Assembly (NCBI GenBank): GCA_024137785.1
Contig: JAHRHZ010000002.1
Span: forward strand, 10,891,263 to 10,955,262
Reading direction: 5' to 3'
Origin: Ginglymostoma cirratum
Taxonomy: Eukaryota
Length of the DNA: 64,000 nt
Below, piece by piece: positions 4,790 through 41,369 of the stretch. The notes under the pieces were generated by a model. That model saw only the letters and a list, made by a program, of their open reading frames with translations, did no database searches and was not told the origin of the DNA. Each line of letters begins with the position of its first letter. Positions within the stretch are counted from its first letter, which is position 1. A program made the position numbers and the translations under genes.

Positions 4790-5490
4790 CATAGAACCCC
4801 GACAGCGTGGAAACAGGACCTTCGGCCCAACAAGTCCACATTGATCATCAGAGCATCCCACCCAGACACATCCCCTATAAGCAAACCTAATCTGTGCATC
4901 CCTGAAGACTATATGGGCAATTTATCATGGCCAACCCACCGAGCCTGCACATCTTTGGATCGTGGGAGGAAACCCACGTAGCCACGGGGAGAACGTGCGA
5001 ATTACACACAGACTAGGGTGGAATTGAACCCTAGTTCCTGGTGCTGCGAGGCAGCAGTGCTAACCACTGAGTCACTGTGAAAGAGGTGCAATAGACTGTG
5101 ATGTCAAATCAATTTGGGTGAAACAAAGGAGGGAAATTTTTGGTAGGACTTTCCTATAGGCCCTCAAGATTTGCCTGACTGAGGGACAAAGCATCAACTA
5201 GAAAACAATGAAGGTGTGCCTCATCACAGAATCTCTACAGTGTGCAAGCAGGTCATTTGGGCCGCTGACAAGGACCCCAACCAGACCCATCTTGTAACTC
5301 TGCACTTCCCATGGCTAAACCACTTACCCTACACATCCCTGGACACTATGGACAATTTAGCATGGGCCAATCCACCTAGCCTGCTCATGGGACGAAACCC
5401 ACGCAGAAATACGGAGAATGTGCAAACTCCACACAGACAGTCAGCCAAGGGTGGGATTGAACCCAGGTCCCTGGTGCTGTGAGGCAACAG
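4790..5490 (-). mobile_element. Two HE1-type SINEs (4790-5080 and 5225-5490)
   Basis: Reverse complement of the 23467 element (gaggcagcagtgctaaccactgag). Confidence 0.75.
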
Positions 5491-5939
5491 TATTGTGAGG
5501 CCTCCAGTGTTGATAACGTCATTGTAAATCTTTTCTTCACCCTCTCCAATTTATTAGATGTGGGCATCACTAGATAGGCCAGCATTTATTGCCTATCCTG
5601 CGCACTGCTTGAAATACATTTTTTGTATTTAGACACACAACACCAATAAGGAGGGAGTTCCAGTAACACTGAAGGTAAGGTGGCATGACTCCAATTCTGA
5701 GTGATAAGTGGCTTGAAGGGGAACTTACAGGTTGTGATGGTTCCACCTATCATAGAGTGAGTGAATGTTTGTGGATGTGGTGCCATTCAAACTTCTTGAG
5801 TATTGTTGAAGCTGCACTCATCCAGTGGGGAACTTTCCATCACACTGCTGACTTGTGCCTAGTAGATGGTGGACAGGATTGGAAGTTTCAAGAGGTGAGT
5901 TGCTGCAGGATACCTCGCCTCTGACCTGTTGGTGTCTTC

Positions 5940-10886: not shown

Positions 10887-10929
10887 ATGAACCCAAGCCC
10901 CATCTTTTGGATATTGGCTGTCTTCTCGG
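10887..10929 (+). CDS. Gene 1 leader (signal peptide) exon MNPSPIFWILAVFS(G)
   Basis: Acceptor ttgcag at 10882, ATG at 10887, hydrophobic core, donor G|GTAAGT at 10930 in phase 1. Same 43-nt coding length as the gene 2 leader. Confidence 0.85.
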
Positions 10930-13900
10930 GTAAGTATCAGTACATTATTTATAAACTTTATGCATTGGTGTATGGAGATTGTGCAAATAAAGGCAATAGT
11001 GCATGGTCCAAAAGACAAGCAAATTAGACTGAGTGCAATGAGATTGCTGAACAGTATCGCTTCTGCTGTAAGCTACCACAACTTCACTATGACGTAGCTC
11101 GACTCATCTACTGTTGCAAAATTATCAACCTCTTTGCCTAGCATTTATAAATTATACAGCACGGAAGCAAACGTTTTAGTCTAACTTTTCCACACTGTCC
11201 AGACATCCAGTCTGACCTTATCCCATTTGCCAGCATTTGGCCCGTATCCTTTAGCCCCACATGCCTTTTAAATGTTGTAATTGTACCCGATTCCAATACT
11301 TCCTCCGGCAGCTTATTCCATAAATGCACCACCTTCTTCAAGAACAAAGTTATCTTGTAAGTCCTTTTTCAATCTTTCCCCTTTCATCTTAAAACCATGC
11401 CATCTAGTTTTGGAATCCCCCAATGGAGGAAAACAGAAATTTCCTTTTGTTAATTATTTTTGAAGGCCAAAACCATTCCCTCCAGTTCCCCACAACTAAC
11501 TCTATCTGGTTCCATGTCAAGTGTCTTGAGGATGAAGCAGAGCATAAAATCTTGGTGTACATAGAACTTTGAGTTGAACCTCTTCACTGAGATTCATGTC
11601 TTTGGATCATTTACCACTCATTTCCATCTTCATAAAGCTGCCTGATTCCACCAAATCTCAATTCATCTGATGCTGGAACCATCAGAGATGCTATTGTTAT
11701 CTCTATACTTGACTGCACTATGAGCAATTTGACATTGCTACCTCTGTAAACCTGATCTCATCCAAACCGCTGATCGTCCTGCCATAAATGTCACAATGTG
11801 CTCCCTCCCAGCCCTGCTGGCAGAGTGGACGGTAATATAAGGTCATTGTGCAGGACTAATGCTGTATCAACGCACTTACAAGTCCTACCAGGCAAGTGGT
11901 GGAATTAAGATTCATCATTGTCGAGGTCTGGAGTACATGGCTCGTCTCAATGATGTTGACGCTAACATTTGTTATTGATGGTTCATTAATGTCTTTTATG
12001 TAAGGAAGTCTGCTATCTGTACCTGGCCAGGGCTACATGACCCATAACAATAACATTGACTCTTAAATAGACCACCAAACCATACAGCTCAATGGCAGTT
12101 ACGAATGGGCAACCAGTGTTGACCTTACAAGTGATAATCAGATCCCCTGTAAAGTGTACAGTTATGAAACAGGGAATTTGACCGAACCAGCATTATCTCC
12201 AGTGTTTTACTGCAAATGAGCCTCTTCTCATTTCTTTTCCTCTCCTCCTACCATTTTATTCCATTTTCACTCATGTCTCACTGGCTTTCCCTTAAATACA
12301 TCCGTGTTATTCACCTCAACTATTTCGAACAATTGAAAGTTTCCCTATTATCATTGGGTGAAAATTTTTTTCTTGAACTACTTTTTGAACTTATTCCTGG
12401 CTATTTTGAATTCATGGCCCCTAGCCAATTATGTTTGGTCATTCTTGAGTGTCTTTATATTGTGTAGATTAGAAGAAGGTCAGGAACATGCACGTTAATT
12501 TGTGCGCAGTCTAATCCCCCATTAATTTGATATGAAATTAAACAAACTCCGCTTTAGTTAATAACTGAATGGGCAGTCTGTTTTAAATATTAATTAAATG
12601 TTACAGCTTTCTTGTTGAAAATCTCCAGAATGCCCATTTGTGTAGAATAGAAGCCTTGTGTTTCAGACCTTGATATTTATGTCCAGGATGTTTCCACGAT
12701 CCAGGGTGAACAGAGGGAAGAAAATTGTTGCTGTTTTTTATACCCTGCATGAGTTGTCATCAGGGCTCAGAGTGACATTTCCAATTCAATCTCAGTCTTT
12801 TCCTGGAACTGAGGAGTTGTAGGACATTTCACTCCTTTCAAACTGGCCTTCTTATCATTTACCAATTTCCGACATCCTATCATTGCAGAGTCGAGTGCTT
12901 TGCTGTATTTACAATGCTTGATCTCTCATAGCTTTCTCAGTCACAGAGTCGCAGAGTGATCACAGAGTCATCCTTCCTTTCTCTGTCCTTCCTCATAGAT
13001 CTTGATACTTAACCTCCTTAGGTATTTTGCTGAGAGTTGGAGATTTCAAGAGTAGGGAGCATATGAGGGGTGAGAGATCTAAAATGAACGTGAGGGGCAC
13101 TTTTTTCAGGAAGTAGTTTGTGTGTGGAATGAACTTGTCGGGGAGTGGTGGATGTGGCTACAGTCACAACGTTGAAAAGGTATTTAGATAAGTCCATGAA
13201 TAAAAAATGTTTGGAAGAATATGCACCAACCGCAGGCAGGTGGTACTAGTTTAGTTTGGAATAATGGACTTGTTGGACTGAAGGGTCTGTTTCTGTGCTG
13301 TATGGCTCTATGACTCAGTAATATCAAAATAGCACATTGGGTCTCCTCGACATGGATGATTTCTGTGATAGATCACCACTGCAGCTTTTTCGAATAACGA
13401 GTTACATATACGTCCCTTTCATATCCTGCTTGTTGGAAGCCAAGTGGAAGGATTTGCTGTTTTTGGTGATCTGCCCAAAGAATGATTTAGCACAGTGATG
13501 CCCATTCCGCTCACCATGTCAGTACAAGGTTTCGAAAAGAGCTCTTTTGTAATTGGACCGGTATCCTTTCCCAATGAAGGGTGCAGTCAGCTTCCTTGTT
13601 CAAACTGTAATGGAATCTGATCCCACTGCCCTTTCAGACAGAGGACAGCATCTCACTGAGTGATTAAACGGTTATCTAAACGTTGCTGCACATTTCCTTC
13701 CCCCCAACCCTTCATTGAGCTGGTAATTTTTTTATTCGTTTTAACGTTGCCTCTCAAAGTTCCAACTTCCAATCACTTCCTCCCCTCTAAGTTTCAGGGA
13801 TCAGCGCCGAGAAGTTCCAAGTTGTTCAGAAACTTTCGACAATTCTGGCGGAGGAGGGTCAATCAGTCCTCATCCCGTGCGAGTGGACAGGCAATGCCTC

Positions 13901-16900
13901 CCGGACAATAGGCTCTTTTAAATGGTTGAAGGATGTTGTGGAAGTTTCCAATCAGACTGCGAAGTTCACAGGGCGAGTGCACACACCCCAAGAGGATTTC
14001 ATCCACAGCCGCAATGCCTCCCTCTTTCTGAAGGAGCTGAAAGTGACTGATTCCGGGATGTATAGGTGCAGCGTGAAATTCATGCAGCTGGGTGAGGAAT
14101 ATGGGAATGGAACACAGCTCATGGTGAGAGGTAAGTGTTTCACTTGTCTGCAAATAGCCATGCGTGGCAGGAGAAATAAGTGCCACAGCACGACTGGTAA
14201 CTTTTCCCAGTTTTTTCCGCCGATGGGGTTCTCTTCAGTTCGAGGACGCTCCCGGTAACACAATTATAGAAAAGTACAATCTTGCACAAGTAAGACATGC
14301 CTTCGTGACTTTTTATGTCCAGTTTTAATGAATAATGTACATTTATATTGTTTGTAAACATTTATAAAGTCAATAACGTGTAAACTATACATGGAAAGTT
14401 ACTACTATCGTGCCTTCAGTATTAAATTCGGTGTGGAGTTTGCACATTCTCCCTGTGTCTGCGTGGGTTTCCTCCCACAGCCCAAAGATGTGCATGTTAG
14501 GGTGGATTAACCATGCTAAATCGCCCATAGTGTTCAAGGATGTGCAGGTTAAGTGGGTTAGCCATGAGAAATGCAGAGTTACAAGGATAGGGTCAGGGAA
14601 TGGGTCTGGGTGGGATGCCCTTCCGATGGGCCGAATTACCTGTTTCCACACTGTAGGGATTCCATTCTAATTTAGCTATGGATACATTATCAGCCTTTTT
14701 GCAAACTTTTTTGTCACGTACTCCCACGAGCGTCCAGATTACCCACTGTCCCAGATTATAATAATCAAATAGGAATCGATAATTTACGCAGGAGCCTGAT
14801 TGTCGCTTTGAAAATTAACTGGGACGAGTATATTGAAAATTGTAGAATAACAACTAATTTAATGCGCAAATGGAGGCAATGTAGTCATAGTGTCATACAG
14901 CACGGAAGCAGACCCTTCAGTCTAACCAATCCATGCTGACCATAATCCCAAGCCAAACTCGTCCCACCTGCCTGTGCTTGGGCCATGTCCCTCCACACAT
15001 TGCTTATTCATGTGCTTATTCAAATGTCTTTTAAATGTTGTACCTGTTTCCACATCCACTGCCTCTGGAAGTTCATTCCACACACGAACCACTCTCTGCG
15101 TAAAAAAAAAAATTGCCCCCATGTCTTTTTTAAACCTCGCTGCTCTCACCTGTAGTATATGCCCCCTGGTCTTGAAATTCCCTATCCTACGGAAAGGACA
15201 CCTACCATTTACTCTATCTCTACACCTCATGATTTTATAAACTTCTATCAGATCACTTTTCGACCTCCGACGCTCTCGGGAAAAAAGTCCCAGCCTATCT
15301 ATCCTTTCTTTATAACTCATACCTTTCGTACCTGGCAACATTCTTGTAAATCTCTTTTGAGCCATCTCCAGCTTCATAATATTCTTCCTGTAACAGGGCG
15401 ACCAGAACTGGACACAGCATTCCAGAAGAGGAGCCTGATTTTCATTTTGAAAATTAACTGGGAAGAGTATTTTGATAATTCTGAAGTTGCAGGAATAATA
15501 ATTATTTAAACATGCGAATGGAAGCAATCATAATATTATGGAGTACAAAAGTGGAGAAAATATTCCTCTGTTGCTTGAAATTACACTTGAACCAAATCTG
15601 GAGTAATTTGGAGGCTTTAGATCCAGAAGGATACATTAGCCTTGCAAGGTCACAATCCTGACCTGCTCGTGTATTATTGCAACTTGGTGTTTAAGCTGAT
15701 GCACGGTTTTGGATTTTATAGATAGGGAAAAAATATTTCTTTTAGCGGGAGCATCAAGAACGGTGGAACATGATCTGAAAATTAGAGACCGATAATTAAA
15801 CAGTGAAGGCAGGATACAGATTCAAATACAAAAGAGGGTGAGAATCTGGAACCCTCTTTGGAAAGCCTGAAAGTACTGAAACTTGAAAAGGCAATGTTGA
15901 CGGATATTGCCAGACAGTGTTAATAAAGGCTATGTAAATTGTCTCGGCAGTTTGAGTTCAGGTTCAGATCAACCATGACCTAACTAAATGATTGAATAGA
16001 TGCAAGGGGCTGAATGGCATGTTTCTTTTACCTGCGTTGTGCTCTGATTTGTTCTTTTTGTTTCTTAGAGAAACCAAAAGGTGGCATGACATTCTGGTTA
16101 TTCCTGTTGATCGGTGCTCTGGTACAACTAGCTCTCCTGATAATTGTTGTGCCCTACTGTGTGAAGTTACACAGAATGAAAGGTAAGGACGTGTGTTTTT
16201 TTGCTGTTTGGCAGATGTAAAGGTTGTGAGATATCATGTTGCAAACATTTACTTTTGTATTTTTTAGGTTGGCATATCTGATTGGCACTCTTATTCACTT
16301 TGCCTTTATCTATCTCTTGAATTTCCTTCTCCCCAACTCGAACCATTTGCCATACTGTCTGTACCTCATCGGAGGTATCACCTGTGGGTCAAAATTCTCA
16401 CGCACCTTCTCTCCCCTTTCCAAAGCACACACTACTAAAGACCTTAACCAATTAGAGTGAACGCGTCCAGTTCACCTAGTATGATCCATTTCCCAAAAAC
16501 TTGAGTAAAATCAACCCACAACAGACCTGCATATGCAATCAGAGGACAACACCGATTTAAATCAATGTTGGATCCCCTCTCTTACAACCTATCACAGCTA
16601 ATACACTTTCCTTCATATCTTCCAAATCTCCAATAGACACAGTAACCATTACTAATTAACTGTTCCAATATAGTAACAATCCATAAACGCACCTTTTGTA
16701 CAAGGCAAATTCAGTAAACACATTGTCTCACATGCACCTCCCACAGCAGGCAGAGAATACCCAATTTTTGGCTATATTCAAGAGAAGGAACGAATAACTT
16801 TCACTTCTTCAGGAGCCCAACTGCAACTGCTGAGAGCTGAAACTAAAAATCCTGATTCTTTGAGAGCTTGCCCGTACCCTCTCAGGCTGCTTCCATTGTT

Positions 16901-19900: not shown

Positions 19901-22900
19901 TTAGGTGCTCAACGTGCTCAAAGGTGAGTTATCATCAGCAGGTACACATTTACTGGTTAAGAAATGCACTCTGTTAGCATTTGAACTGATTGAACGATTT
20001 TTATAATGTTTAGCAGTAAATTTCATTTCACGCAGATTGTCTGCAACCCATTTTCTGCAAGGATACGGGAGCCTGAAACACTCATGAGAGTTGAGACAGA
20101 GCTCCACGTAAATGCACTTAAGATGCCCAAAGTTAAAGGTCAAATTTTGGAAAGTTATAGACAACCAGGAAAATCACCTTATCTCAACAGACATGATGGG
20201 TTGAATAGCCTTCTCTCTGCTTTAAATATATCCACATTTCTGCCGTCAAATGTTATCAGCAAATGTGGTTGAGTTCTTACTTTTCTTTGTTTTGCAGACA
20301 AGTCCAAGTTATTTCAGAAATCATCTGCATAGATGGTACGTAAAGCTGGTTTTGGTTATATTTGAAAATAATATAAACTTCTATGGGATTATTAAAACCC
20401 TCAGGATTACTATGATACTGAGTTTAAAATAGTTGAAAAATTTCCAGTTTGACACCCGAGTTATGATTCAGAAAAAAAAGTCCCCAAACATTACAGTTTT
20501 CTTAACTCATTTAATAGCTTCTTATAAATGTTTCTATTTCCACAAAGTACTTACCTCTCAGTCAATGGCACCTGATTTAATCAAAGGCAGCACTTTGTTT
20601 TCACTCTTCCGTTGAACAGAAATCCCACCTTTAGAGATAATTACAATTTTCTGCCTCTTAACAGATTGTCTTCGTCATGGTGTGCACTTACGCAAGTTAG
20701 AGGAAAGCAAAGTTCTGTGGGAGAAACAAGTATACAATTCCAGGAATGTGGATACGAATATTAGTGAAAAAACATACACTTTGTCACACTTGTCTTGTAC
20801 CCATTAGGACAATTGAATAATCTAAATACTAAAGTAAAGGGAAAACATATTGTATATCATAGTATTGTATGAGTGAAAATGCGAATTGGTTGGCAAATTA
20901 CCTCTGACGACGGAGGCATTGAGATGTAGGATGAACTAGTTCTGGATGACTGACAGTTAACTGCCAAATTTTCATTAAATATTCAACTCGGCAGCTTGAC
21001 CCTGATTGGTCAGGGCATTGCCCAACTGATAATCCTAAATTGGTTATCAGTGTAACTCTTCACGAATCAGGATTATATAGCATTTATTTTCCTATCACAG
21101 AATCACCGTAGTGTTGGACGCTGCATTGTGAGGTTTGGAAGTGCAGACAAGTTGAATACCTTTCTTGTTTCACTGAGTTGGAGGGATATTCAGTGTCATA
21201 AAATTCTAGAGTGCTACAGAGATCGGGCTGGAGAGTCGGACTAGCTGGGTAGCTTTTGGGGGGGCTAGTACAGGCACGATAACTTGAATGGCTTCCTTCT
21301 ATGTGGTAAGTTTCCATGATTCTATGTTTCTAAGTTCTGCAATTCATAGGGACAAATGGCTGGCTTTCCTAGCGTCGGCACAACAATGAAATTCGCATGC
21401 CACATTAATTGCAGTGTGATAGGCAGAATGCCTTTTCAGCTTGGCCGGAAAAATGAAACAGATGTGTTTGCTGTGACTGAAATTAATGATGTGGTATGTG
21501 CCTATCAATACCTGTTTGATGCTCGACAGGTAAGCCATATGTTTGTTTGACAATTAGCAAATATCATATAAAATGACATATCCTTTCAGATGTTTGCCGT
21601 AACCAGAGGCTGAGTATTTGCAACCAGCCTATTTCGGCAAAAAGCAGACCAAACATTAGATGTGATCCTGTGATTAAACAACATTTTCAAAATACTCTTT
21701 GGGGGCATGCAAAACATAAACTTTCAATGATTCTCTTCAGCTATAATTACATGAAGTATGACCAAACCATTATTTGTCAATGGATATAAACATTAACAAA
21801 ATTTAAGGACTGTAGTGAGAGAGTGGGGAAAGTGTGTGAAAGTGAGAGTAACAGACTTGTGAAAGGGACAAGACAGACTCCATGGTCTGACACACATTCT
21901 ATTGAGCTGTGTCAGCCTATTCTATGGTTCTATTCTAATTGTGTGAATACCTGAGATGCTCAACTGTTGGATACATTGGGGTTGAATTTGGATGTGAATG
22001 GGGCTACAGGACACGCTGGAAATTGTATTTTACTGACTGTTTTCCCAGCTAATGAACGTACGCTCCTATCAAAGATGAGATTGAACATTAACCAGGAAAA
22101 TATCCTGCGGAATTGGGGGAAAGATAGTTTTACCTCTCAGACGATATCACTGTCTGTTGATTTTATTGAGGGGCAAGATTGTTTAGGGTATAGAGCCAAT
22201 ATTCTGAATATTCTTGCTGTTTTTCACAATTGGCAGTTTAAGGTAAAAATGCAGCTGTTTCAATGAAATTTCTCAAAATGCATAATTTGAGTCATAGTGT
22301 CGTACAGCAGAGAAACAGACCCTTCAGTCCAACCAGTCCATGCTGACCATAAGCCCAAACTAAACTAGTCACTAAGCCCATATCGCTCCAAACATTTCCT
22401 ATTCATTGTCAGAAATTCTTCATTCAATTAAACAGAAACCATTTCACAGCCAGTAAAATTCCCTGGCATCTTTCAAAGAAGAGTCTTTTAACTTTTGTAA
22501 CTTTACCCACATGCACCGCTTCCTCTGGAAGTTCATTGCCCACACGAAACACTCTCTGTGCAAAACATAAATGCCCTTCATATCTTTTTAAAATATTTCT
22601 CCTCTCACCCTAAAAATATGTCCGCTTGTCTTTATATACCGCACCCGAGGGAAAACAACCTGCCAGTCACCTTATCTGTACTTCATGACTTTATGAACCT
22701 CTTTAAGGTCACTCCTCAACCTCCAGCGAAAAAAATGTCCGAGACTATCCAGCCTCTCCTTAGAACTCAAACCCTCCATTCCTGCAACTTCCTGGTAAAT
22801 CTCTTCTGAATTCTCTCTAGCTTAATACTATCCTTCCTATCATAGGCCGACCAGAACCGAACACAGTACTCCGGAAGATTACTCACCAGCACTCTGTAAA

Positions 22901-25900
22901 ACCTCAAATGGATGTTGGTTCTTTTAAAAGACAGTCAGTTGAATAAGCAAACATTATAAACTTAAGGCATTTCATACAATTTCTGAGCTGCAATGAGTCT
23001 TATGCTTTTATTTTAACATCAGGAAGCAACTGTATCAAAGTTGCAAAACTATTACTGGCCCTCGGGACCTAACTGATGAGTTAAGTAACAATCAATTTAT
23101 ATATTACAGTGCCCTACAGACAGCAACTCTAAGTGTTACTATCAACATTGGTTCATGTTGGAATTACTTATGGGAATATTGTTGAACAGTAGTCGACAAG
23201 GGTACCCTACTCTTCTTTGAAAGACGCCAGGAAATTTTACTGACTGTGAAATGATTTCTGTTTAATTGAATGAAGAATGTCTGACAATGCTACACTCCCT
23301 CAGTTCCAGACAGAAATAAAAAGACATTTTTCTGTTCTCCGATTGTGGATTATCGCTTGAATCCAGATCTTTCACTATTTAGTGTTGCAAACTAAGCACA
23401 AGTGGAAGTTTTAAGAAGTCTTATGGACATACTTATGAGATAGTATCTTATATAGATTCATCTAGACGGTGGCTCAGTGTTTAGCACTGCTGCCTCACTG
23501 TGCCAGGGACCTGGGTTCCATTCCACACTCTGGCGACTGTCTGTGTGGAGATTGTGCGTTCTCCCCGTGTCTGCATGGGTTTCCGCCAGGTGCTCCGGTT
23601 TCCTCTCTCAGCCCAAAGATGTGCAGGCAAGGAGAATTGGCCATACCAAATTGCCTGCAGTGCTCAGAGGTGTGTGGATTAGGTGGGTTATGGGGGATTG
23701 GTCTGGGTGGGATTCTCTGAGTGTTGGTGTGTAATTGTTGGGCCAAACGGCCTGTTTCCACATTATAGGGATTCCATGACCACAAGAAACTCTTTCCATA
23801 AAAGTGCTGATAATGCAACATTTCTGACAATTCCAGCAGATACCTTCCGTTACAGAGGCCTAGGATCATACAGCACAGAAACAGACCCTTCGGTACAACC
23901 TGTCCATGCCGAACATAATCCCAAACTAAACTAGTCTAATCTGCCTGCTGCAGGCCCATATATCCCCAAACCTTTCCTATTCATGTCGGTTCCATATTTG
24001 CATTCTCATGCTTTTGTCTTTTAGATATTCTAACATTACCTGTCCTGGATGAAGTGCAGAATCTGGTAAGTAACCTGAAATGAAGACAATCACAACACTT
24101 GAAATCTGCATTTGCAGATTAGGATTGAAACAAAATATACCCAAGCCCCCATATACAAAATCAAATACAAGATTGCCGAAATGCCTAGATTGTTCCTGAA
24201 AATGATTGTCATTAAAGACCAGAAATAGATTTTGTTAAAAATAACTGGGAGGCTGACACTGCTCACTATTATACTCAAGGTCTGCTGCCTCAATTCAAAG
24301 TGTAGTTAATAATTTGCTGTCAGACCTCCCACACTTCTCCATTGGCTCTGATATTGTTGTCTCATCACCGGGAACAATGCACCAACTTGAACTTGGGATA
24401 ATTGATGACTAGCTTTCCAGTATAATGATGACAGATAACAATTAAAGCCAGCGCATTGAGAAGTAAATGACCTGAGCAACAATAAACGCTGACAGAAAAC
24501 TGTATTGCTTCTGAAGAAGTTCACAAGTATTAAGTGTCATTTCCGAAATAGGTAATGAGTTTGGAAATATCATTGTGTATGTACTGAGAGAGTGTGTATA
24601 CGTTTTAATCCTAACTGTATTTCACAATCTTATTTCACTTTCTGTTCTTGATTTAAATCCAGTTCATACACTTTGCTTTATCTATGACGGTTTGCATTCT
24701 GGGATTACAAGTGGCAGCATAAGTTGCTGGTAGCCAACAGATAATATTCCGTTCCATTGCTATCAACAGGATTAAACATCAAGGATAGTGATTAATCAGA
24801 AGTCAATTCCATACCATCTGCTTTGCTGCCATTTGTTAGAATATCTTTTATCCCTATGCGAGTCAGCGTGGATTGTTCAATTGGATAGTTCCTGGTCTTG
24901 CTGGATATGTTAGACTACCTGTAGATAGCACTCAGCTTAAAATTAATTTAAAACTTCTCTGAAGACTAAAATCTGTAAAACAAAGTTGTATACAACCGTA
25001 GCTGAGACAATGAATGATCGCCATTGATCAACTGTGAAACTCAGACATTACATTCTGCATTGATAAAGCTGATACCAAATAACCATAAGGAATATGACCA
25101 TCTTTCACTTCTAATTGTTCACAGACAAAACATATTATTTCAATGTTTTACCAAAAGGAAGTCATAACACACATCCATTGGCAAACCATAGGAAGAGTAT
25201 GGTTGAGTCTCATTTGGAGACAGTGCCAAAGGTTCTTAGAGTCTCCAATAACAAGTGAGAGATTGTTTAATCTGTGGTGAGGATTACCTTAAAAACCTGC
25301 ATTTCACTGATGCCTACTAGTTAAATTGTACATTTTAAGATCAACATCCTTAATATTCTGACTCCTTCCAGTCATATGAAGACATTTACTTCGTGCAGGA
25401 GAATATTTGTCTCTGTGGACTCAACATGACATGAAATTTCTGCATGTTTATTAACAACAATATCAAAAAAGTGAGCTGTTCTGGCATGTTGGTGACATGG
25501 GAAGCATGCCAGAGAGAATCTTTGGGTCCAAGCTTCCTGATGATGTCGTTAGCATGGGAGCTAAAGGGATTTTCTTACTCTGTTCTCACAATGTGTTAAA
25601 CAGAGTTGGGATATTTCTTTTTTACCAGTGATAACTTAAAACACAGTGAGAGGAGTTTCATGTCCAATTTTTAATGCATTTATTTTAGGGTGGCTACATT
25701 TGAAGCATTCATAGTGCAACACCATTTCTATACAGTTATGTTTAAGCTGCAGTAAAGCACAATGTTAATTGGAGCACACACGCGTGTAGGTGGCATGGGG
25801 ACTCAATCGTTAGCACTGCTGCTTCACGTCCAGGCAGGGAACTGGTTTAATTTGGGCAACAGGCTTTTTGGAAATTGTGCATTCTGCCTGTGTCTGTGTG

Positions 25901-28900: not shown

Positions 28901-31900
28901 TTTCCAATAAATAACAACACCTCCCAGTCACAAACCATTTCAACTCCCCCTTCCCACTGCCTGGATGACATGTGCATCCTTGGCCTCCTCCAGTGTCACA
29001 ATGATGTCACCCGAAAAATGGGGGAACAACACTTCATATTCCGTCTTGGAAGACGACAGCTCAATGGTCTCCAAGTGGAATTTAAAAGCTTCAAAATTCC
29101 CCCACACCCCGACCTCATCCTAAGACCAGCCTCCCCTCTGATCCCCGCCTCAATTACCTGTCCATCTTCTCTCCCACCTATCCGCTCCTCCCACCTCACT
29201 GACCAATCCCCACCACTACCTACCTGCTATCACCGTCACCCCACTGTCTATTTATTTCAGAGTCGCCTTCCCCTCTCCCTTTTGTGAAGAAGGGTCCCGA
29301 ACCGAAATGTCAGCTTTCCTGCTCCTCTGAAGCTGCCTGGCCTGCTGTGCTCATCCAGCTCCACACCTTGTCATCGCGAACACTAATCGTGTTTGTTTCA
29401 CAGTTCTCTCCTCGCGGTTTTAAGTAATTGGCATTCATAATGTTAGCCAACTATTGCTTTTTAAAAAAAAAATTGTCAGTTAGAAATTATATAAATGTAG
29501 GTCTGTTCATTGGTATTCGTCTCTTTTCCATCAGTTTGGCTCAATTACTGACGTTCTTGCTTCTGAAGCAAGGTATTGCAGAACTAAGTTCTCCTTCAAA
29601 AATTCCATCGATAATTGTGATTTACTGCAATTGTGTGGGAATGAGGGTATGCTAAGATGCAAGATATTCCACCTCTCAAGATATCCACTCTTCAGGGTAA
29701 ACGTTGTCGGCATTTTGACAAAGCTCATTCATTCCAGCATGTGGCTTTCAGAAAATATACTGAGGCATCCAAGTGCATATCAATGAGATGAACTGGTCAT
29801 TTATGTTACTTTACTGCTGTATCTGGAACTGTTATTTTTAAAATAAACATTCATAACGATAATGAATTCACACAATGCAATCACCATTAATTTTTATTCT
29901 GTCATGAGATGTGCATTGGAACTGGAAATTTTTTTTCCTTATTCCTAACTGCCCTTGGAAAGAGGGCAGTTGAGAGCCACCCACATTGCTGTGGGTCTGG
30001 AGCAAGATGTAGGTCAGACCAGATGATGAATGCAGATTTCATTCCTTCAAGCGAAATACAACAAGTAGGAATTTTGCAAAACAATGAGATTGCTTCTTTT
30101 AATTTCAGATTCATTGTTTGAGCCACCACTGATAGGACTTGAACTCATGCCCAACAGAAGGAACATCAGTCTTGGAATGCTAGCTCACTGGTACAGTTAC
30201 TGCATCTTAGCTAATGTGGTGAAGTGGTGGGCAGGTGGGATAGAGATCAGACAACAATTTAGCACTCTGATAGCATTGCATTTGAGTTCCAGTCTGGATT
30301 TGAGAGTTGGGTGGAGCTTGACATCATAAACTTTTGATTCGATTTGATTTGATTTATTGTTGTCGTATGTACCGAGATGCAGTGAAAAGTGTTGTTTTGC
30401 GTACTATACAGGCAGACTGTACAATACGAAGTGCATCAGGATAGCCGAATAGAGTGCTGAATACAGTGTGACAGGTGTAGAGAAGTTTCAGAGAGAGAGA
30501 GAGATCAGAATTAACATTTGAGAGGTCCATTCAAAAGTTTGATAATAGCAGGGGAAAAGCTGTTCATGAACCCGAGCATATGTGTGGACAAAGTTTTATG
30601 TCTTCTACCCAACGTGGGGAGGGGGGGAGTTGGGACGTGGGTGTAACCAGGGTGGGAGGGGTCTTTAATTATGTTGATTAGCTTCTCGATGCAGCAGGAA
30701 GTTTCGATCGAGTCAAAGGAAGGAAGGCTGGTTTGTGTGATGGATTGGGCTGTGTTCACGACTCTCTGTAGTTTCTTGTCGTATTGTGAAGAGCAATTGT
30801 CACAACACACTGTGATGCATCCAGATAGGATGCTTTCGATGGTGCATCTATAAAAATTAGTCAGTGTCTTTGATTCACAGGCAACAGGATATACCTCATT
30901 GAGCAGCAATCAGCATTACACTCGAGGGGGTTAGGTAAGGATATCTACAGCAATTATCTCTATGAGCAGGGCTATGGCAATCCAGGAATGAATAGACTTT
31001 ATAAAAATGTCAGGACAGGCTATTCTCGGCTATTCTATCGTACAATTAGAAGGTGGCTCAACTGATTTTAGAAGAAATCTGCTATTTCTTCAATCTCTCT
31101 TCCGAACTGTCACGAACAAAGCATCAATCTACCAGACTTTACTTTGCCTTACAGTGTTGAACTACATTGACTTTTTCTTACCCATTATATTTTGTTCTTG
31201 CAGATTGCCAAACTCCTCCGCCCAAACCATGGGTAAGCAATAATCTAAAGTGCATAGTTCATCAACAAATCATACAAAAGTGTAATCTTTAGTTGCAATC
31301 ATTTCACAGGCGCATCTGTCACCATTGTTAAATGTGTTATTTGATTCATGCTGTTCCTGATCGAACTGCCTTTCAAAATTGTAACCTGTAGGAACCCAAA
31401 GAGTTGCATTTTCCCCCAAATTTCAGATGAGATTTTCTACACATGTAAATTAGTGTGCAAATTGGCTGGCTTTCATAAATCAACATACTGAACAATTACA
31501 GAACATGACTGAAACAACATGAAAATAAAGCATTCAGCACACTTAGTTGAAAGATTATGAGATGAGACAAAATTAGAGTAGAACCACTCCAGTGCGGAAG
31601 CAGACCATTCAAACATTCAAAACTACACTGACCCACTAAAGAGCATCCCACCCAGATTCATCCCCTTGTCCGATCTCTAATTTTACATTTCCCATGGCTA
31701 ACCTACACATCCCTGGACTGGCTGACTTAGCATGGAAAATACATCTAACGTGCACATCTTTGGACTGTGAGAAGAAACCGGATCACCCAAAGAAAACACA
31801 CACAGAAGTAAGGAGACTGTGCAGACTGCACACAGACAGTTGCCTGACGGTAGGATTTAACTCAGGTCCCTGGTGCCGTGAGGCAGCGATGCTAGCCACT

Positions 31901-34900
31901 GAAGCAATCCTTCAATGGGCACTTTTTCTTTTCTTTATTCATTCACGGGATGAGGGCATCACTGGCAAGGCCAGAATTTATTGCCCATCAATAATTGCGC
32001 AGAGGGCAGCAAAGAGTCAACGACATTACTGTGGTTTGGAGTCACATGTAGGCCAGGCCAGGTAAGGACGGCAGTTTCTTTCCTGAAGGACATGAGTGAA
32101 CCAGATGTTTTTTTTAACAACAATCAAGAATGGATTCATGATCATCCTTAGATTCTTAATTCTCGCTATTTTATTGGATTCAAATACCACGATCGGCTGT
32201 CGCAGGATTCGAACCAGAGTCCACAAAACGTTACCTAGGCATCTGGATTAATAGCCGAGTGACAACAGCACTAGGCCATCGACTCCCCTTCAATACTTCG
32301 ACGCATTTATGGCCATTAGTTTCTCAAAATTGCTTGCATTTGGCAACATTCCTTGCTTAATCTCGATTGAAAAGGCTGGTCACTTGCGCAAATGGTATGT
32401 CACACAAGCGCGCGAGTGTGGTTAATTTAGCCTAACCGAACATTTTGTTTAATTAGGCAATGTCATCATTTGGTGTACAATACGCAACATTAGTGTTAGA
32501 CAAGACATGCGGATCATCTTCTCTGAACGTGATTGTGGAAGGCGATGATTTAGAGTGAGTCAAAAATTTCTCTCTTTGAAATGACTCAAATGTCATATTT
32601 GCCTTATTCACTTGAAACTGTTATGACTGGAGGGTTGCTTGAAAAGAAAAACTTTTATTCACCGTTTCCACAGTGCTCCAACAATCACAGTTGGGGAGTC
32701 AACATTGTCACTCAATATACCATTGAAAAAAACACTGTTCGAGATGCGCACTTCCTTTCCAAAACCATTCTTTCTTTGATTAGCCTCAGCCTGTTAGTCA
32801 ATATGACATGCTGGAATCAGTTTATTTCTTGTTGACTTCTGTCAATGAGTTCAATTCTTCCCAAATTCTGGCAGAGCACGTCAGTTAGTCCACTGCTGAG
32901 CAATGCTCGGAAGCTGCTGGATGGATTTCCTGAATCCTGCCTCAGATCTGGTAATTTGACTAGTCGAATTACATCTGGACTGCAACACCTCACGTTCACC
33001 TTTAAATTAAGGCAAAGTTAGGGTCGAGACTATCTTCTTCATGTACTTTGAGGGGGTTTGGTCTGGTCCATACCCAGAACTAAAAATAAGGCTTTATTGA
33101 AATAAAATAGGGCACAGTGGGTGGTTGGGGAGGCTGAAGATATTTGTTCTAGACCACATGCCCTGAGTTTCTGAGGCATTCTTGTTTAATTCTGACTTTT
33201 TCGATGTTTACTATCATCTCAGTAGTTTTTAATTCCTTGATGCGTATTTTATTCTCATTTTTGCAATCTCTTCCTCTCCTTTTGCAGGCATGATTATGGA
33301 TATGACGAGCTTAATGTAACAGGTGACTAACAAGGAAGTATATGTTTTGGGGAAGCTGGATGGTTTATTATATCTTGCAACTTTTGTTTTGTAACCTCAA
33401 GAATTTGAGGCAAGTAGTGACTAATTCAATATGGCTTTGCTCCCCCTGTTAACCGTAAGTACCCCCGGTTTAGTGGTGCAGGATATTGTTGTGAGTGAAG
33501 CAGACAGTTTCCCAGAGTCAACGGAGTGAAATGCTGGCTGATTCGGAAGTTCTGATAACTTCCTACAAAACGAGTTTCGATCCCATCTTTCCAGCTCAGA
33601 AAATGACCTGTCAGTTGATACATTTTGACCTTCCTTCCCTGTCTTACTCAGAGGGGCGTAAAGCAACAGGACGTTGAAGTGAAAGTGATGATGATGGACA
33701 GATTTGTCTAAAGGTCCCTTTGCATCAACTGATGCAGGTTATTGTTAGCACATAAAACACTACCTCCTATTTAGCTCTCTTTGAAATACCTGCCCAGATG
33801 TAGCGATTTCTGTGGTACACGTTGCATATTTTCCCGTTTACATTGAATATGGTGCTAAATGAAAGTGATCTATAACCCTGCAGCAGTGGTGATGTAGGCA
33901 AGCAACTTCATCAACTATTCCATTTGAGGAATTCTCACAGTCAGCAATGTTGGAATTTAAATTGAGAATGTCTTCATTTTTGATTTTAAAATTTGATGAA
34001 ATACGGATACAGTTTTAAAATATCATTTGAAAATACATATTTTTTTCCTCACTGTGGAGAAATCTGAGACTCTTCATCAAAAGAATCTTTGCAGCGCCAG
34101 CAAGTAAGTCATTTCCAAATGAAAGCTCATACGGGTCTCTTTAAAGAATGTGTATTTTAGGCATTTGTTTTACTCTGACTGATAGTGTCGGACTGGGAAA
34201 TTCAGTAATATTCCATTGCTTGGGGTATTTCAGGAATACATTCTCTCGAGCAAGGCAGAATCACTCGAGCAGCAGCTCTGGGGTCCTACACATTATTAAG
34301 TACATGGACAGTCTCCAGAAGATAATGCCAGTTTCAGTGCAATTATGACAATGGTAGTGAAGGCGAGCAGTGCCGCTGTCATTAACACTTCAAAACTAAC
34401 GGAATTTATGTAATATCTTTTTGTGGAATTAAATTCATTTTTTAATGCATTCAAGGTGAACATGACCACCTTTTTACTCGCCATCCCTCGTAATTCTGTA
34501 ACGCTAATTGTGGTATCAGTTCTGGTGCTGGAAGTACTTCCAACATTTTACTCAGTTGGTAATGTCAGGATTTTGATACATTGCCCATAAAAACTCGGAT
34601 ATATGCCCATGAATGTAACCTGTCGCTTGGCATTCATGCTGTCAGGATCTTGCAGCTGCCAGAGAATGAAACAGCACAGAAGGAGGCTATTCAGGGCAGT
34701 GCACCAGTCTTAATACTTTCAAATAGCGACCCAACTATTCAAATTTATCTGCAAATCTGCAGGAAAAACTTTGAACAATTTAACTGTAAACGTTTAGAAT
34801 AAAATTCCTGGCATGATCTTTAAAATTGGTATGCGATCAATGCAAGATTAAGGGACTAAGGATTGACACAATTCTTCTGAGACTGTTTCCTTACGGGAAT

Positions 34901-37900
34901 GAAACATAAAACTATTTAATTGTACTTCTCTCTCATTTAATCCTCAGCAAAACGATATCTTACACCTGAAAGTATATCAAAGGACGAGGTAAGATAAAAG
35001 TGACAGTGCCCTTCACTTGTGTAAGCCAAGTTGGCATTTAATTCAACAAATATGAGCCAGTTCCAATTAAAGATTGGCAGCTAATTGCAATCCGTGGAAG
35101 GTGATAATTAATGGTGGGAAAGTAAGATGACATTCATTTTCGGAGGGTTTTTGTTGTGGTGGAGGAAGCTGAAAAGATGGATAAGGTCAACTGGAGTTCT
35201 TTATCCATTGCCCATTAACCTTGAAGCATTTATACAATCCCTTCAAAGTGTGTTTTGATTATTGTGCTTAACAGAATTATTCATGTTTCATATCATCTTC
35301 TCAAATTGGACATGGGTCAACAAAGCAAACATGGAATATTCTGAACCATTGTAAAATAAAACTGAGGGAAACAGAAAGTCATTAGGATTGCGATTCTCAC
35401 CTCTTTTATACTAAAGAGCAAATTGTATCAGACTTATTGTTTGCATTTGCAATTAAAGCAACCTATATGCACCCCGTGTTAACATGAAAACCTATAGGAT
35501 GGGGCAGTCGTGGAGTTTGCTTTAACTGGTGTTCAACTGTATTGCTTAACCATGGTTCCTCTTCATAATTTGTGCAGGAAAATGGAGAAAATCCTCAGGA
35601 GTGCACTGAAACGGTGAATGAATAGGACGATGGAGAAATTGTACCTTATCTTCTGTTTTCAGTGCAGAGGCTCATGAACGTATGCGGTGTGATATCAGCC
35701 CTTGTTTAATTCTTATTTCATACACAGGATTAGAAACGATACACAACAGAAAAGGTCAATCCAATACAAGCATTTCAGACCTGTGGTTAGACTCCACACG
35801 AACCTGTCCCCATCTTTCTTTTCTAAACCTATCATCTGAACCGTTTATGCTCATTTCCCTTATTTGCCTATCTAGTTTCCCATTTAGTGCATCAATACTT
35901 TGTGCTTTAACCACACCAGGTAGTAAGATATTCCACATTCTGACCGAGCTTGAGACAAGGAAGTGTCTAATAACAAGTGGAATTTATTTATCTTATATTG
36001 AAGACTCACAGTTATTTTCTTCCCCACAAAAGAAAACATTCTCTCTTCATCTATTTTGTTAAAACTGTTCATAATTTCAAAGACTTGCACGCAGACTCTC
36101 CGCGACTTTCATTGTTGTTTTCATTTCTCGTTCTTGAGAAAAAAGGAAAGAGTTACTTTTTCCAGTGCCTGTTCTGCTTCCACGACATCTCAAAGCGCTT
36201 TACTGCCAATGAAGGCATCTGATAGCAAATGTCCTTCTCTGTATTTTAAAATTTATTTGTCTTATCCAATAAGCATTGTAAATCAGTGTATGAATCATAA
36301 AGTATAAATGTTTTGATGTGTTTCATACATTCTTGTCCTGTAGTGTTGTGTCAGGATATTATTTGGTTCTCTAATTCAGAATCTTTTTTGTTTTCATTGT
36401 TTCATGGTTGGCACTGAGGTCTGGGTCAAGAAACAGGACTGGTGTCTGGACTCATTAGCAAAAGTGTAAGCACTGTGCTTCTCCTGTGGTACAAATTGAT
36501 GTTTCCTTTGGAAATTGGAATTCTTGCATCTGTCCTGAACTATTTAAATGAAGTGTTTTGACAAATAGGTTTGGCCTCGTGCATTAAATGTTGGACAGAC
36601 ATAAATAATTGCATGATGTCTATTTGACTTTGACTGTCCTGCAGAATATTTTGCTACATATGCCCATGTTTTCCTCCTGAAACTGACAGACATAGTTAAA
36701 CTATATGTCTTAACCTACTGGACCCGCAGGAAGCCCACAGGCTATGTGGAAGGTTCATTTTATATATCAGCCAATATCACTCTTCAATGATTTTAGTGAT
36801 CAGTATAATTGGGCTGGTGTCATGCACCCGCACTTCTCATCTGAGCTGTGATTAAGAGGATGAGAGACTCCATGTTGGAAGCCAGATTTGGAGTGATCTT
36901 TGGCCTCCTCCACATTTGTGGGAGAAGAGCTCTGAATAAAGGTCACTTATACTGCTGCCCAGACCACCACATTAATTTTAAGTTTAGAGCTTGGCCGCAA
37001 GGCTAATTGGGAAACGGCAATGCTTAAAATTGAACTTTTCATGAGTGAAAACACAATTCTGAATGAAGGAATGAGGACTAGTAATATAGTTAAGAAAGCA
37101 TGTTTCTAAGCATGGGAGAGAAGGTTCAGTAATGCATACGCTATTTCTCTAATATTGAATATTCTTTGTAAACCATGTTGCACCTGACACAAAATGAATG
37201 TGACTCATGTGTGTCAATGACTAACAACATAATCAAAACTGAATCAAAACTGTTGTAGCGGCCCAAGGCTAAAGTTGATGAGATGGCCAAAAACGGTTGA
37301 CAGCTGCATGCAGCAAAAGCCAGACTTGTGGTCTCCATTTGGAGATAATGACAATGATAAGATTCTCCATAGCAAGAAACACTAGAGAAGTTAATCAGAC
37401 TTCTGTAAACAGACAATTCTAAATAATAAGCATTTTAATAAGGGGCAATTTTGAAAGGCCTAGTTTAGCCACAGTCCCAATTTTGATATTAATTAATTAA
37501 TTAATTAATTAGAAGGAAATGTTTGATTCTACAGAATTCTGAATTTTTTAGGCAACTGTAGAATTGGAAAAGCAAACAACACATTAATGTGAAAGGTTAA
37601 TTGCATTCCTTGAGGTAATGTTTGTCGGCAGTAAGAATTTCCATTGCGTTATTAGGGAAGATAATGTAACAGATGGTGTAAACACAATCTCTAAAAGACC
37701 ATTGGCACAGGAGGAGGGCAGTGGAAGGTGGTAAAAAGAGGTCATGACTCGGGAGAGATACAAAATTGAAGCTGAAGTGCAGATGTAGATAATTTGAACA
37801 AATTCTTAAGGACAAAAAAGATTAAAAATTACAGAATCAAAATATGGTCATGAACCCTCGTTACTTGTGGAATCTAAACAAGTTTCTTTTAAAGACTTGG

Positions 37901-41207: not shown

Positions 41208-41369
41208 AACTTCAAGTGAAGTGTTCTGCTTTTGCTTGACTAGGTCCAGGAGAAATTTGTCTGGGACTCCTCTGCAGTTAAAACGTTTGAACTGAAATCC
41301 ACACTGACTGCAAGAGCATTTGTCAGCAATGGACAATAAAATATATTTATGCAATAAATGATCAATAAA
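41139..41369 (+). CDS. Candidate terminal exon and 3'UTR of gene 1
   Basis: gtttacag acceptor. Phase 0 gives GSKAFERGSSETYALDFKNHRW* (stop 41205-41207); phase 2 gives DQRLLKEDLQKRMH*. Followed by three AATAAA. Confidence 0.45.
41335..41369 (+). terminator. Cluster of three polyadenylation signals
   Basis: AATAAA at 41335, 41353 and 41364. Confidence 0.5.

What the first reader, a model, noticed from the sequence alone, without database searches (positions are those of the whole stretch)
10887..41369. NKp30-like shark receptor that appears to signal on its own: no TM Arg, long Tyr-motif tail built from 10 or more micro-exons
Seen in sequence: an NKp30-type V-J exon, a very short stalk, a TM with no Arg/Lys/Asp (only a Gln), and then a frame-consistent chain of 19-50 nt exons over about 25 kb. 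The chain reads ...HRMKGAQRAQRQVQVISEIICIDDILTLPVLDEVQNLDQDESVLESDALCMVENYEDTSIYTPMESLKTFSNSTATEM..., with further candidates carrying YDEL, YLTP, YSPI and TYAL. Established: mammalian NKp30 has a short tail and pairs with CD3zeta/FcRgamma through a TM Arg; YxxM binds PI3K p85, as in CD28/CTLA4. Inference: this is an adaptor-independent receptor joining an NKp30 (B7-family-binding) ectodomain to a CD28-like or transmembrane-adaptor-like docking tail. That would be a candidate ancestral or lineage-specific costimulatory/inhibitory system. Shark NCR3 families are known in general, so the novelty of this tail architecture needs checking.
Basis: partly seen in the sequence, partly recalled or inferred. 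Interest (0 to 1): 0.85.

Follow-up and report, generated by a model that had tools for sequence, protein, structure and literature searches.

The report
Shark NKp30-like receptor, ITIM micro-exon tail

Summary
On the + strand there is a 14-exon, 320-aa open reading frame. It has a leader (10887-10929), an NKp30-type V-J exon (13798-14130), a short stalk plus uncharged TM (16069-16182), and 11 cytoplasmic exons (19905-35625). Ten of these are 19-48 nt and one is 98 nt.

I added exons at 31204, 32457, 33288, 34948 and 35578. The stop is at 35623-35625, not near 41369. The YSPI and TYAL candidates have no support.

RNA contigs from three studies, plus raw polyA reads, show every predicted junction in 31.1-37.1 kb. 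However, their exonic parts differ from the window by about 4-5%, so an allele or close paralogue may be the source.

The same tail occurs in six other elasmobranchs. Three Tyr motifs are conserved: IYxPM, a canonical ITIM (VQYATL, the best conserved) and Y[D/E]ELN. I read the gene as an adaptor-independent, probably inhibitory member of the shark NCR3 family, not as CD28-like.

It is a new member of a known kind. This scan holds first-reader notes on other NKp30-like receptors elsewhere in this genome.

The parts
10887..10929 (+). Exon 1: start codon and signal peptide (MNPSPIFWILAVFS, then G split by a phase-1 intron)
   Evidence: Matches the leaders of P0001, P0004 and P0005. Donor is CGG|GTAAGT.
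13798..14130 (+). Exon 2: NKp30-type germline-joined V-J domain, 333 nt, phase 1-1
   Evidence: Pfam V-set, E 2.4e-12. Human NKp30 is the top solved structure at E 1.1e-12. 86% identical to the Stegostoma NCR3-like protein P0001. The nearest single-V relatives outside elasmobranchs whose names I looked up are all annotated NCR3 (lungfish, turtles, lizards).
16069..16182 (+). Exon 3: 6-residue stalk, uncharged TM (single Gln) and juxtamembrane CVKLHRMK, 114 nt, phase 1-1
   Evidence: 68% identical to the Stegostoma P0155 TM exon at E 1e-10. The Gln position is E, Q or H across the family.
19905..19923 (+). Exon 4, 19 nt (G-AQRAQ-R)
   Evidence: Acceptor ttattttag, donor AAG|GTGAGT. Colinear with P0155 GAQPAQR and P0151 GAQWAQR.
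20298..20335 (+). Exon 5, 38 nt (QVQVISEIICID)
   Evidence: Splice sites. Homologues have QVQVVSEIFCVD and QDTVSPEIVCVD.
24025..24065 (+). Exon 6, 41 nt (DILTLPVLDEVQNL)
   Evidence: tblastn with P0155 gives E 1.8e-4 and 83% identity. Donor is CTG|GTAAGT.
26257..26298 (+). Exon 7, 42 nt, phase 0-0 cassette (DQDESVLESDALCM)
   Evidence: Absent from Heterodontus isoform P0020 but present in P0152.
26386..26429 (+). Exon 8, 44 nt (VENYEDTSIYTPME): conserved IYxPM motif, Tyr220
   Evidence: The intervening 26299-26385 contains stop codons in this window. It is read as coding in the Chiloscyllium models.
28338..28375 (+). Exon 9, 38 nt (SLKTFSNSTATEM, then the G of an Asp codon); GC donor
   Evidence: The split Asp codon (G|AY) is conserved in all homologues that retain this block, apart from Gly in Carcharodon. 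This fits the phase-1 GC donor TGG|GCAAGT.
31204..31232 (+). Exon 10, 29 nt (D-CQTPPPKPW), found here
   Evidence: Splice-site and phase scan. Matches P0155 DCQIPPPKLW. The doner at 31232 is used in RNA contigs of X1 and X4 and in one raw read of X11.
32457..32554 (+). Exon 11, 98 nt (AMSSFGVQYATLVLDKTCGSSSLNVIVEGDDLE): canonical ITIM V-x-Y-x-x-L, Tyr256
   Evidence: tblastn with P0155 gives E 5.9e-13 and 94% identity. The joint 32554^33288 is seen in X1, X2, X4 and X11. [IV]xYxx[IL] is present in all seven full-tail homologues.
33288..33322 (+). Exon 12, 35 nt (HDYGYDELNVT): conserved Y[D/E]ELN, Tyr285
   Evidence: Identical peptide in Stegostoma and Chiloscyllium and a near-identical one (NIT for NVT) in Scyliorhinus and Carcharodon. 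RNA joints lie on both sides.
34948..34988 (+). Exon 13, 41 nt (AKRYLTPESISKDE); skipped in some transcripts
   Evidence: Joints 33322^34948 and 34988^35578 appear in X1. The skip 33322^35578 appears in X4 and X11. X2 carries a diverged copy of this exon. Skipping shifts the frame to ...NVTGKWRKSSGVH*.
35578..35625 (+). Exon 14, coding part (ENGENPQECTETVNE, TAG at 35623-35625); 3' UTR continues at least to 35861
   Evidence: The Stegostoma and Chiloscyllium proteins end at the same residue. RNA contigs run unspliced across the stop: 35576-35683 and 35654-35861, the latter with 0 mismatches.

Best explanation
This is an intact member of the elasmobranch NCR3 (NKp30-like) family, and it or a near-identical copy is transcribed. 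It signals through its own tail rather than through an ITAM adaptor.

Shown here:
- One germline-joined V-J domain of NKp30 type.
- A 6-residue stalk and a TM helix with no basic residue.
- A 156-residue, strongly acidic (net -24) cytoplasmic tail encoded by 11 exons.
- Three tyrosine motifs conserved across sharks and a ray: IYxPM (Tyr220), a canonical ITIM VQYATL (Tyr256) and YDELN (Tyr285).

Inferred:
- On ligand engagement (probably a B7H6-like ligand), Src-family kinases phosphorylate the tail.
- The ITIM and the distal YxxL, 29 residues apart, recruit SHP-1 or SHP-2 through their tandem SH2 domains and dampen activation.
- The YxPM site may add PI3K or another SH2 input.
- The micro-exon layout lets splicing edit the tail. 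Exon 13 skipping is seen in RNA here. Exon 7 (42 nt) and the ITIM block of exons 9-11 (165 nt) are in-frame cassettes, and both are absent from annotated Heterodontus isoforms.
For: - Gene model: 963-nt ORF, 14 exons, all phases consistent.
- The tail is 135/156 identical and ungapped to Stegostoma LOC132206215, as conserved as the V domain at 86%.
- The same exon order and motifs occur in Chiloscyllium, Scyliorhinus, Carcharodon, Heterodontus and Mobula.
- The V domain's best solved relative is human NKp30, E 1.1e-12 against 6.8e-06 for the next protein. No CD28, CTLA-4 or PD-1 chain reaches E <= 0.01.
- All seven named single-V relatives outside elasmobranchs that I looked up are annotated NCR3.
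- Spliced RNA covers exons 10 to 14 in three studies' contigs and in raw polyA reads.
- The Heterodontus isoforms are.
- Mammalian NKp30 needs a TM Arg to pair with CD3zeta or FcRgamma (PMC6514059). That residue is absent here.
Against: - No binding or signalling data exist, so the inhibitory role rests on motif logic.
- The second motif (Y-G-Y-D-E-L) lacks the canonical -2 residue of an ITIM.
- YxxM and the acidic tail could support positive signalling.
- The spliced RNA contigs differ from the window by about 4-5% in exons 11 and 14, and by more in X2's exon 13. They may therefore come from an allele or a roughly 94-95% identical paralogue. Intron and 3' UTR pieces with 0 mismatches show that the same species, and probably this locus, is transcribed.
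- Junctions from exon 3 to exon 9 were not seen in RNA here, because they lie outside the one 6-kb stretch allowed.
- Exon 9 uses a rare GC donor.
- The family-wide polar TM residue (E, Q or H) could mean a partner chain after all.
Confidence: 0.65

Rival explanations
1. The receptor is costimulatory or activating. The YxPM site recruits PI3K p85 as in CD28, ICOS or DAP10, and the acidic Tyr-rich tail acts as a LAT/PAG-like docking platform. The ITIM-like sequence would be secondary or would serve another SH2 protein.
For: IYxPM is conserved in all but one full-length homologue. The Heterodontus isoform P0153 keeps YxPM-region sequence and YEELN while dropping the ITIM block. Micro-exon tails are typical of transmembrane adaptors (my recollection).
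Against: The ITIM is the best conserved Tyr motif: [IV]xYxx[IL] is present in every full-tail homologue. In P0002 and P0153 the YxPM Tyr is replaced (IDTPM). The +1 residue (T, L or I) is not the Met or Val preferred by p85 (my recollection). The V domain and stalk show no CD28-family feature.
Confidence: 0.15
2. This particular copy is silent or decaying. The spliced RNA seen belongs to a close paralogue, and the window's ORF is merely not yet broken.
For: Exonic RNA contigs carry 4 differences in 92 nt (exon 11) and 4 in 108 nt (exon 14). They also replace 32457-32462. X4 holds about 94%-identical unspliced contigs covering intron sequence, which implies a paralogous locus. Exon 9 has a GC donor.
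Against: The 320-aa ORF is complete, with 13 usable donors and 13 AG acceptors. Its tail is as conserved to Stegostoma as its V domain. Contigs with 0 mismatches cover intron 9 plus exon 10 up to the donor (31100-31233), introns 12 and 13, and the 3' UTR (35654-35861, depth 16). The variant exon-14 contig overlaps that exact-match UTR contig by 30 nt, as consecutive unitigs of one transcript would.
Confidence: 0.12
3. The tail exons belong to a separate downstream gene (a transmembrane-adaptor-like gene). They would be joined to the V-TM exons only in gene-prediction artefacts.
Against: Models with V, TM and tail in one product come from five species (Stegostoma, Chiloscyllium, Carcharodon, Heterodontus and Mobula); the Scyliorhinus model joins V domains directly to the tail without a TM exon. 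Exon 3 ends in a strong phase-1 donor that matches exon 4's phase. No alternative leader or TM exon lies between 16183 and 19904 in the homologue searches. The 380-nt X1 contig extends 158 nt upstream of exon 10, as expected for exons 6-9.
Confidence: 0.03

Closest known systems
Mammalian NKp30 (NCR3)
   Same: A single V-J-type Ig domain encoded by one exon, ending in the G-x-G-T-x-L-x-V motif. It is the best sequence match among solved structures. It is a type I membrane protein with a short stalk.
   Different: Human NKp30 has a TM Arg that pairs with CD3zeta or FcRgamma, and a short tail without signalling motifs (PMC6514059). It has about 4 exons (my recollection). The shark gene has no basic TM residue, a 156-aa tail with an ITIM, and 14 coding exons.
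Shark NCR3 family (Kinlein et al. 2021, Immunogenetics 73:333; eight nurse-shark subtypes) and Xenopus MHC-linked NKp30-like genes
   Same: Same V-J family in the same animal group. The papers report multiple, highly divergent paralogues (from my memory of the abstract).
   Different: I could not read these papers because they are not held. I therefore cannot say whether this long-tailed, ITIM-bearing subtype or its exon structure is already described. RefSeq calls the orthologues 'uncharacterized protein', 'turtle-like' or 'SIRP beta-2-like'.
ITIM-bearing inhibitory IgSF receptors (PD-1, KIR-L, LAIR-1, SIRPalpha, PECAM-1)
   Same: Uncharged TM. A canonical ITIM followed about 25-30 residues later by a second YxxL/I motif. 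PECAM-1 also encodes its tail in many small, alternatively spliced exons (my recollection).
   Different: There is no sequence homology to any of their tails. The ectodomain is NKp30-type. An extra conserved YxPM and a strongly acidic tail are present. The second motif is not a canonical ITIM or ITSM.
CD28/CTLA-4 family
   Same: A single V domain and a YxxM in the tail. The NKp30 fold is considered related to CTLA-4 and PD-1 (PMC6514059).
   Different: No CD28-family chain matches the V domain at E <= 0.01. There is no stalk cysteine for dimerisation. The tail is much longer, carries an ITIM and is built from 11 exons.

Membership tests
NCR3 / NKp30 family | Single non-rearranging V-J Ig domain in one exon with a J-like GxGTxLxV motif, closest to NKp30 among IgSF V domains | tested here: met
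   Exon 13798-14130 contains YGNGTQLMV. Pfam V-set, E 2.4e-12. Human NKp30 scores E 1.1e-12 and the next unrelated protein 6.8e-06. Named single-V relatives outside elasmobranchs are all NCR3.
NCR3 / NKp30 family | Basic TM residue (Arg) for pairing with CD3zeta or FcRgamma (mammalian definition) | tested here: not met
   TM is MTFWLFLLIGALVQLALLIIVVPYCV, with no Arg or Lys. Homologues have E, Q or H at the Gln position.
NCR3 / NKp30 family | Short cytoplasmic tail without intrinsic signalling motifs (mammalian definition) | tested here: not met
   156-aa tail carrying an ITIM, YxPM and YDEL.
NCR3 / NKp30 family | Binds B7H6; linked to the MHC | not testable with these tools
   No binding assay is available. 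The 64-kb window holds no MHC marker that I identified.
ITIM-type inhibitory immunoreceptors | Cytoplasmic (I/V/L/S)xYxx(I/V/L) motif with an uncharged TM | tested here: met
   VQYATL in exon 11. [IV]xYxx[IL] is conserved in seven homologues. The exon is present in spliced RNA.
ITIM-type inhibitory immunoreceptors | Phospho-ITIM recruits SHP-1, SHP-2 or SHIP and suppresses activation | not testable with these tools
   Needs pull-downs and cell assays.
CD28/CTLA-4 family | CD28-type V domain, membrane-proximal Cys for a disulfide dimer, short tail with YxxM | tested here: not met
   No CD28, CTLA-4, PD-1 or ICOS chain matches at E <= 0.01. The stalk EKPKGG has no Cys. Only the YxxM element is present.
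Transmembrane adaptor proteins (LAT/PAG/NTAL type) | Minimal ectodomain, juxtamembrane palmitoylated CxxC, multi-Tyr tail | tested here: not met
   A full V-J ectodomain is present. There is only one juxtamembrane Cys (PYCVKL). A multi-Tyr acidic tail is present.

The most novel reading that the evidence does not exclude
The micro-exon tail may be a splice-programmable signalling module. Under this reading, in-frame removal of the ITIM block (exons 9-11, 165 nt) or of exon 7, together with frame-shifting loss of exon 13, would give one NKp30-like gene both inhibitory and non-inhibitory (YxPM/YDEL-only) outputs. This would be an ancient counterpart of the functionally opposed human NKp30 splice isoforms. 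In addition, the family-wide polar TM residue (E, Q or H) might mediate assembly with Arg-bearing short-tailed NKp30-like paralogues, making the long-tailed chain a built-in signalling partner.
Probability: 0.15. Interest if true: 0.7.

Novelty: new member of a known kind. Interest (0 to 1): 0.45.

Why it matters
NKp30 is often cited as the one NK receptor conserved from sharks to humans, and it is known as an adaptor-dependent activator. This gene and its relatives in other sharks and a ray show something different. An old, well conserved branch of the family carries its own ITIM-containing tail, and that tail is as conserved as the ligand-binding domain.

That gives a concrete candidate for the inhibitory half of an ancient NKp30/B7H6-type recognition system. 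It also supplies three defined tyrosines to mutate and a clear set of cassette exons to follow in RNA. In addition, it corrects database names ('turtle-like', 'SIRP beta-2-like', 'uncharacterized') for this gene family.

Tried and rejected
I therefore had no orthologous DNA for exon-by-exon DNA comparison or dN/dS.
- The key shark and frog NKp30 papers are not held: Kinlein 2021, Flajnik 2012, and Ohta & Flajnik 2015. Prior description of this subtype could not be checked.
- Tail-only protein searches with P0151 and P0157 found only elasmobranch proteins. These searches are word-limited, so absence elsewhere is not shown.
- Pfam finds nothing in the tail. Rfam finds nothing in 10-42 kb.
They have no homologue match. 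The orthologues stop at 35625, and RNA runs unspliced through the stop.
- The coding read-through of 26299-26385 seen in the Chiloscyllium models was rejected for this window, because it contains stop codons here.
The solved-structure ranking was used instead.
- The joined 320-aa model was assembled only inside scripts, to check frame and to align locally with fetched homologues. It was not sent to any search, fold or complex tool. Database searches used single exons by reference or database proteins.
- No structure or complex prediction was run.
Full report
**What is in the sequence**

Three-frame translation and splice-site inspection locate a leader exon, a V-J exon and a stalk/TM exon.
- The leader exon is at 10887-10929.
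- The V-J exon is at 13798-14130 (333 nt, phase 1-1) and ends in YGNGTQLMV.
- The stalk/TM exon is at 16069-16182 (114 nt, phase 1-1). It encodes EKPKGG, then MTFWLFLLIGALVQLALLIIVVPYCV, then KLHRMK.

Each follows a pyrimidine-rich AG acceptor. Each has a GT donor close to consensus, except exon 9, which has a GC donor (TGG|GCAAGT).

**Is the chain more than chance?**

Yes. An exhaustive profile-free search of the V exon against 1.84 billion representative proteins, followed by cluster look-ups, returned elasmobranch RefSeq proteins with the same tail in the same order.
- Chiloscyllium punctatum XP_072406317.1 (P0151)
- Scyliorhinus canicula XP_038671255.1 (P0004)
- Mobula hypostoma XP_062903900.1 (P0008)
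- Heterodontus francisci isoforms (P0020, P0152, P0002, P0153)

A tail-only search added two more.
- Stegostoma tigrinum LOC132206215 (P0155)
- Carcharodon carcharias LOC121291130 (P0157, P0158)

It also revealed later exons at 32457-32554, 33288-33322, 34948-34988 and 35578-35625. A phase-aware scan of 28376-32456 found the one missing piece, 31204-31232 (DCQTPPPKPW), against DCQIPPPKLW in Stegostoma.

The 14 exons give a 963-nt ORF of 320 residues with consistent phases. The 156-residue tail is 135/156 identical to the Stegostoma protein without a gap, the same level as the V domain at 86%. Both the Stegostoma and Chiloscyllium proteins end at the residue before this window's TAG (35623-35625).

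The finding's true 3' coding limit is therefore 35625, not 41369.

**RNA**

Only one 6-kb stretch could be laid. I chose 31100-37099 because it holds five exons, the ITIM exon and the 3' end.

Every predicted junction in the stretch was seen.
- 31232^32457: X1, X4 and one raw read of the polyA library X11. The six bases 32457-32462 read ACAACT instead of GCAATG.
- 32554^33288: X1, X2, X4 and two X11 reads.
- 33322^34948 and 34988^35578: X1.

Other observations from the same call:
- X4 and X11 also show 33322^35578, which is exon 13 skipping.
- X2 carries a diverged exon 13 between the same two sites.
- One 380-nt X1 contig runs through exons 10-14 and extends 158 nt further 5'. That is the length expected for exons 9, 8, 7 and most of exon 6.
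- Contigs run unspliced across the stop into the 3' UTR. The piece 35654-35861 has 0 mismatches and depth 16.

Caveat: the exonic contigs differ from the window by about 4-5%. X4 also holds about 94%-identical unspliced contigs. A close paralogue or a divergent allele therefore contributes to the RNA signal. Zero-mismatch pieces over intron 9 plus exon 10, over introns 12 and 13, and over the UTR show that the same species, and probably this locus, is transcribed.

**What the domains are**

The V exon matches Pfam V-set. Among all solved structures its best relatives are the four human NKp30 entries (E about 1e-12). The next hit is an unrelated Ig protein at 6.8e-06, and no CD28, CTLA-4, PD-1, ICOS or BTLA chain reaches E <= 0.01.

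I looked up names for ten hits. The seven named single-V relatives outside elasmobranchs are all annotated NCR3 or NCR3-like (lungfish, turtles, lizards). The other three were an unnamed entry and two elasmobranch proteins. So the ectodomain is NKp30-type.

The tail has no Pfam match. It is strongly acidic, with 32 D/E against 8 K/R.

An alignment of eight tails shows three conserved tyrosine motifs.
- I-Y-x-P-M followed by S[LV]K[TE]F.
- [IV]-x-Y-x-x-[IL], a canonical ITIM (VQYATL here).
- [YFD]-[GE]-Y-[DE]-E-L-N.

Tyr214 and Tyr295 are not conserved. The ITIM and the YDEL tyrosines are 29 residues apart.

The TM Gln position is always polar: E in Stegostoma, Carcharodon and Heterodontus, H in Chiloscyllium, and Q in Mobula and here.

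**How it most likely works**

Shown: an NKp30-type V domain, an uncharged TM and an ITIM-bearing tail lie in one gene, and this layout is conserved between sharks and a ray.

Established: mammalian NKp30 signals through a TM Arg paired with CD3zeta or FcRgamma (PMC6514059). That route is not available here.

Inferred: the receptor signals autonomously. Because the ITIM is the best conserved tyrosine motif and sits at the classic distance from a second YxxL, it most likely recruits SHP-1 or SHP-2 and inhibits. The YxPM site may add a PI3K or other SH2 input.

**Splicing logic**

Exon 7 (42 nt) and the block of exons 9-11 (38+29+98 = 165 nt) can be skipped in frame.
- Heterodontus isoform P0020 lacks the exon 7 equivalent.
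- Heterodontus isoform P0153 joins ...TPME directly to RQDYEYEELN, which removes the ITIM block.
- Exon 13 skipping, seen in RNA here, shifts the frame and replaces the last 29 residues by 10.
- The Scyliorhinus model lacks the TM exon, which is also an in-frame unit.

Whether these isoforms matter functionally is unknown.

**Comparison and novelty**

The gene is a member of the shark NCR3 family by its V domain. It fails the mammalian NKp30 criteria of a TM Arg and a short tail. It meets the sequence definition of an ITIM receptor. It is not a CD28-family member or a transmembrane adaptor.

Models with the same tail already sit in RefSeq under uninformative or wrong names. Eight divergent nurse-shark NCR3 subtypes have been published (Kinlein et al. 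2021). I could not read that paper, so I cannot exclude that this subtype is described there.

I therefore class it as a new member of a known kind. Its conserved three-motif tail and its 11-exon tail layout would be of moderate interest to comparative immunologists.

This scan's notes list other NKp30-like genes in the same genome, including one read as inhibitory about 27 kb upstream of the window. I did not test those notes.

**Limits**

- There was one reads call of 6 kb.
- Protein searches are word-limited.
- The joined model was used only inside scripts and was never sent to a search or fold tool.

Noticed in passing
window 56020-56361 and about 59397-59525 (+): A second, diverged NKp30-like gene lies downstream. 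Its V-J exon is 31% identical to gene 1 (via P0001) and 75% identical to P0045. A candidate stalk/TM exon ends ...VMIAVICRNKMKG|gt. It is uncharged and has the same phase-1 'MKG' donor as gene 1, so it may also have a long tail running beyond the window. Its nearest database relative, P0045, instead has a TM Arg and a short tail.
   Followed up: partly
window about 31600-32300 (intron 10): An interspersed repeat with RNA word depth up to about 29,000 and dozens of different flanking sequences in all four runs. It has no Rfam match.
   Followed up: no
window 5006-5077, 5418-5495 (+) and 23470-23553 (-): Repeat-borne ORF fragments (..PGPWCCEAAVLTTE..) match the odd 46-residue N-terminal extension of the Chiloscyllium punctatum model XP_072406317.1. 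That extension is therefore probably an annotation artefact.
   Followed up: partly
window 35649-35696 (+, 3' UTR, other frame): SSVFSAEAHERMRCDI resembles the longer C-terminus of the Carcharodon protein (SSILNSEAEEKIQCDV, E 0.011). It looks like a remnant of a longer ancestral last exon that is now behind the stop codon.
   Followed up: partly
window 26299-26385 (intron 7): This 87-nt intron is read as coding (NYAALQQKQSNQEQSLICVPKV) in the Chiloscyllium models. In this window it contains two stop codons. It is either a lineage difference or intron retention in those models.
   Followed up: partly
window 48503-48625 (-): A weak V-domain-like fragment with an internal stop, ending ..GYGTQLTVR (E 0.06 to P0001). 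It may be a decayed V exon. It lies beside the stretch that another note calls an EXOC3/TNFAIP2-like pseudogene.
   Followed up: no
TM exon 16069-16182, Gln147: The single polar TM position is E, Q or H in all seven family members whose models include a TM exon (the Scyliorhinus model lacks that exon). This suggests a conserved intramembrane contact, either self-association or a partner.
   Followed up: partly
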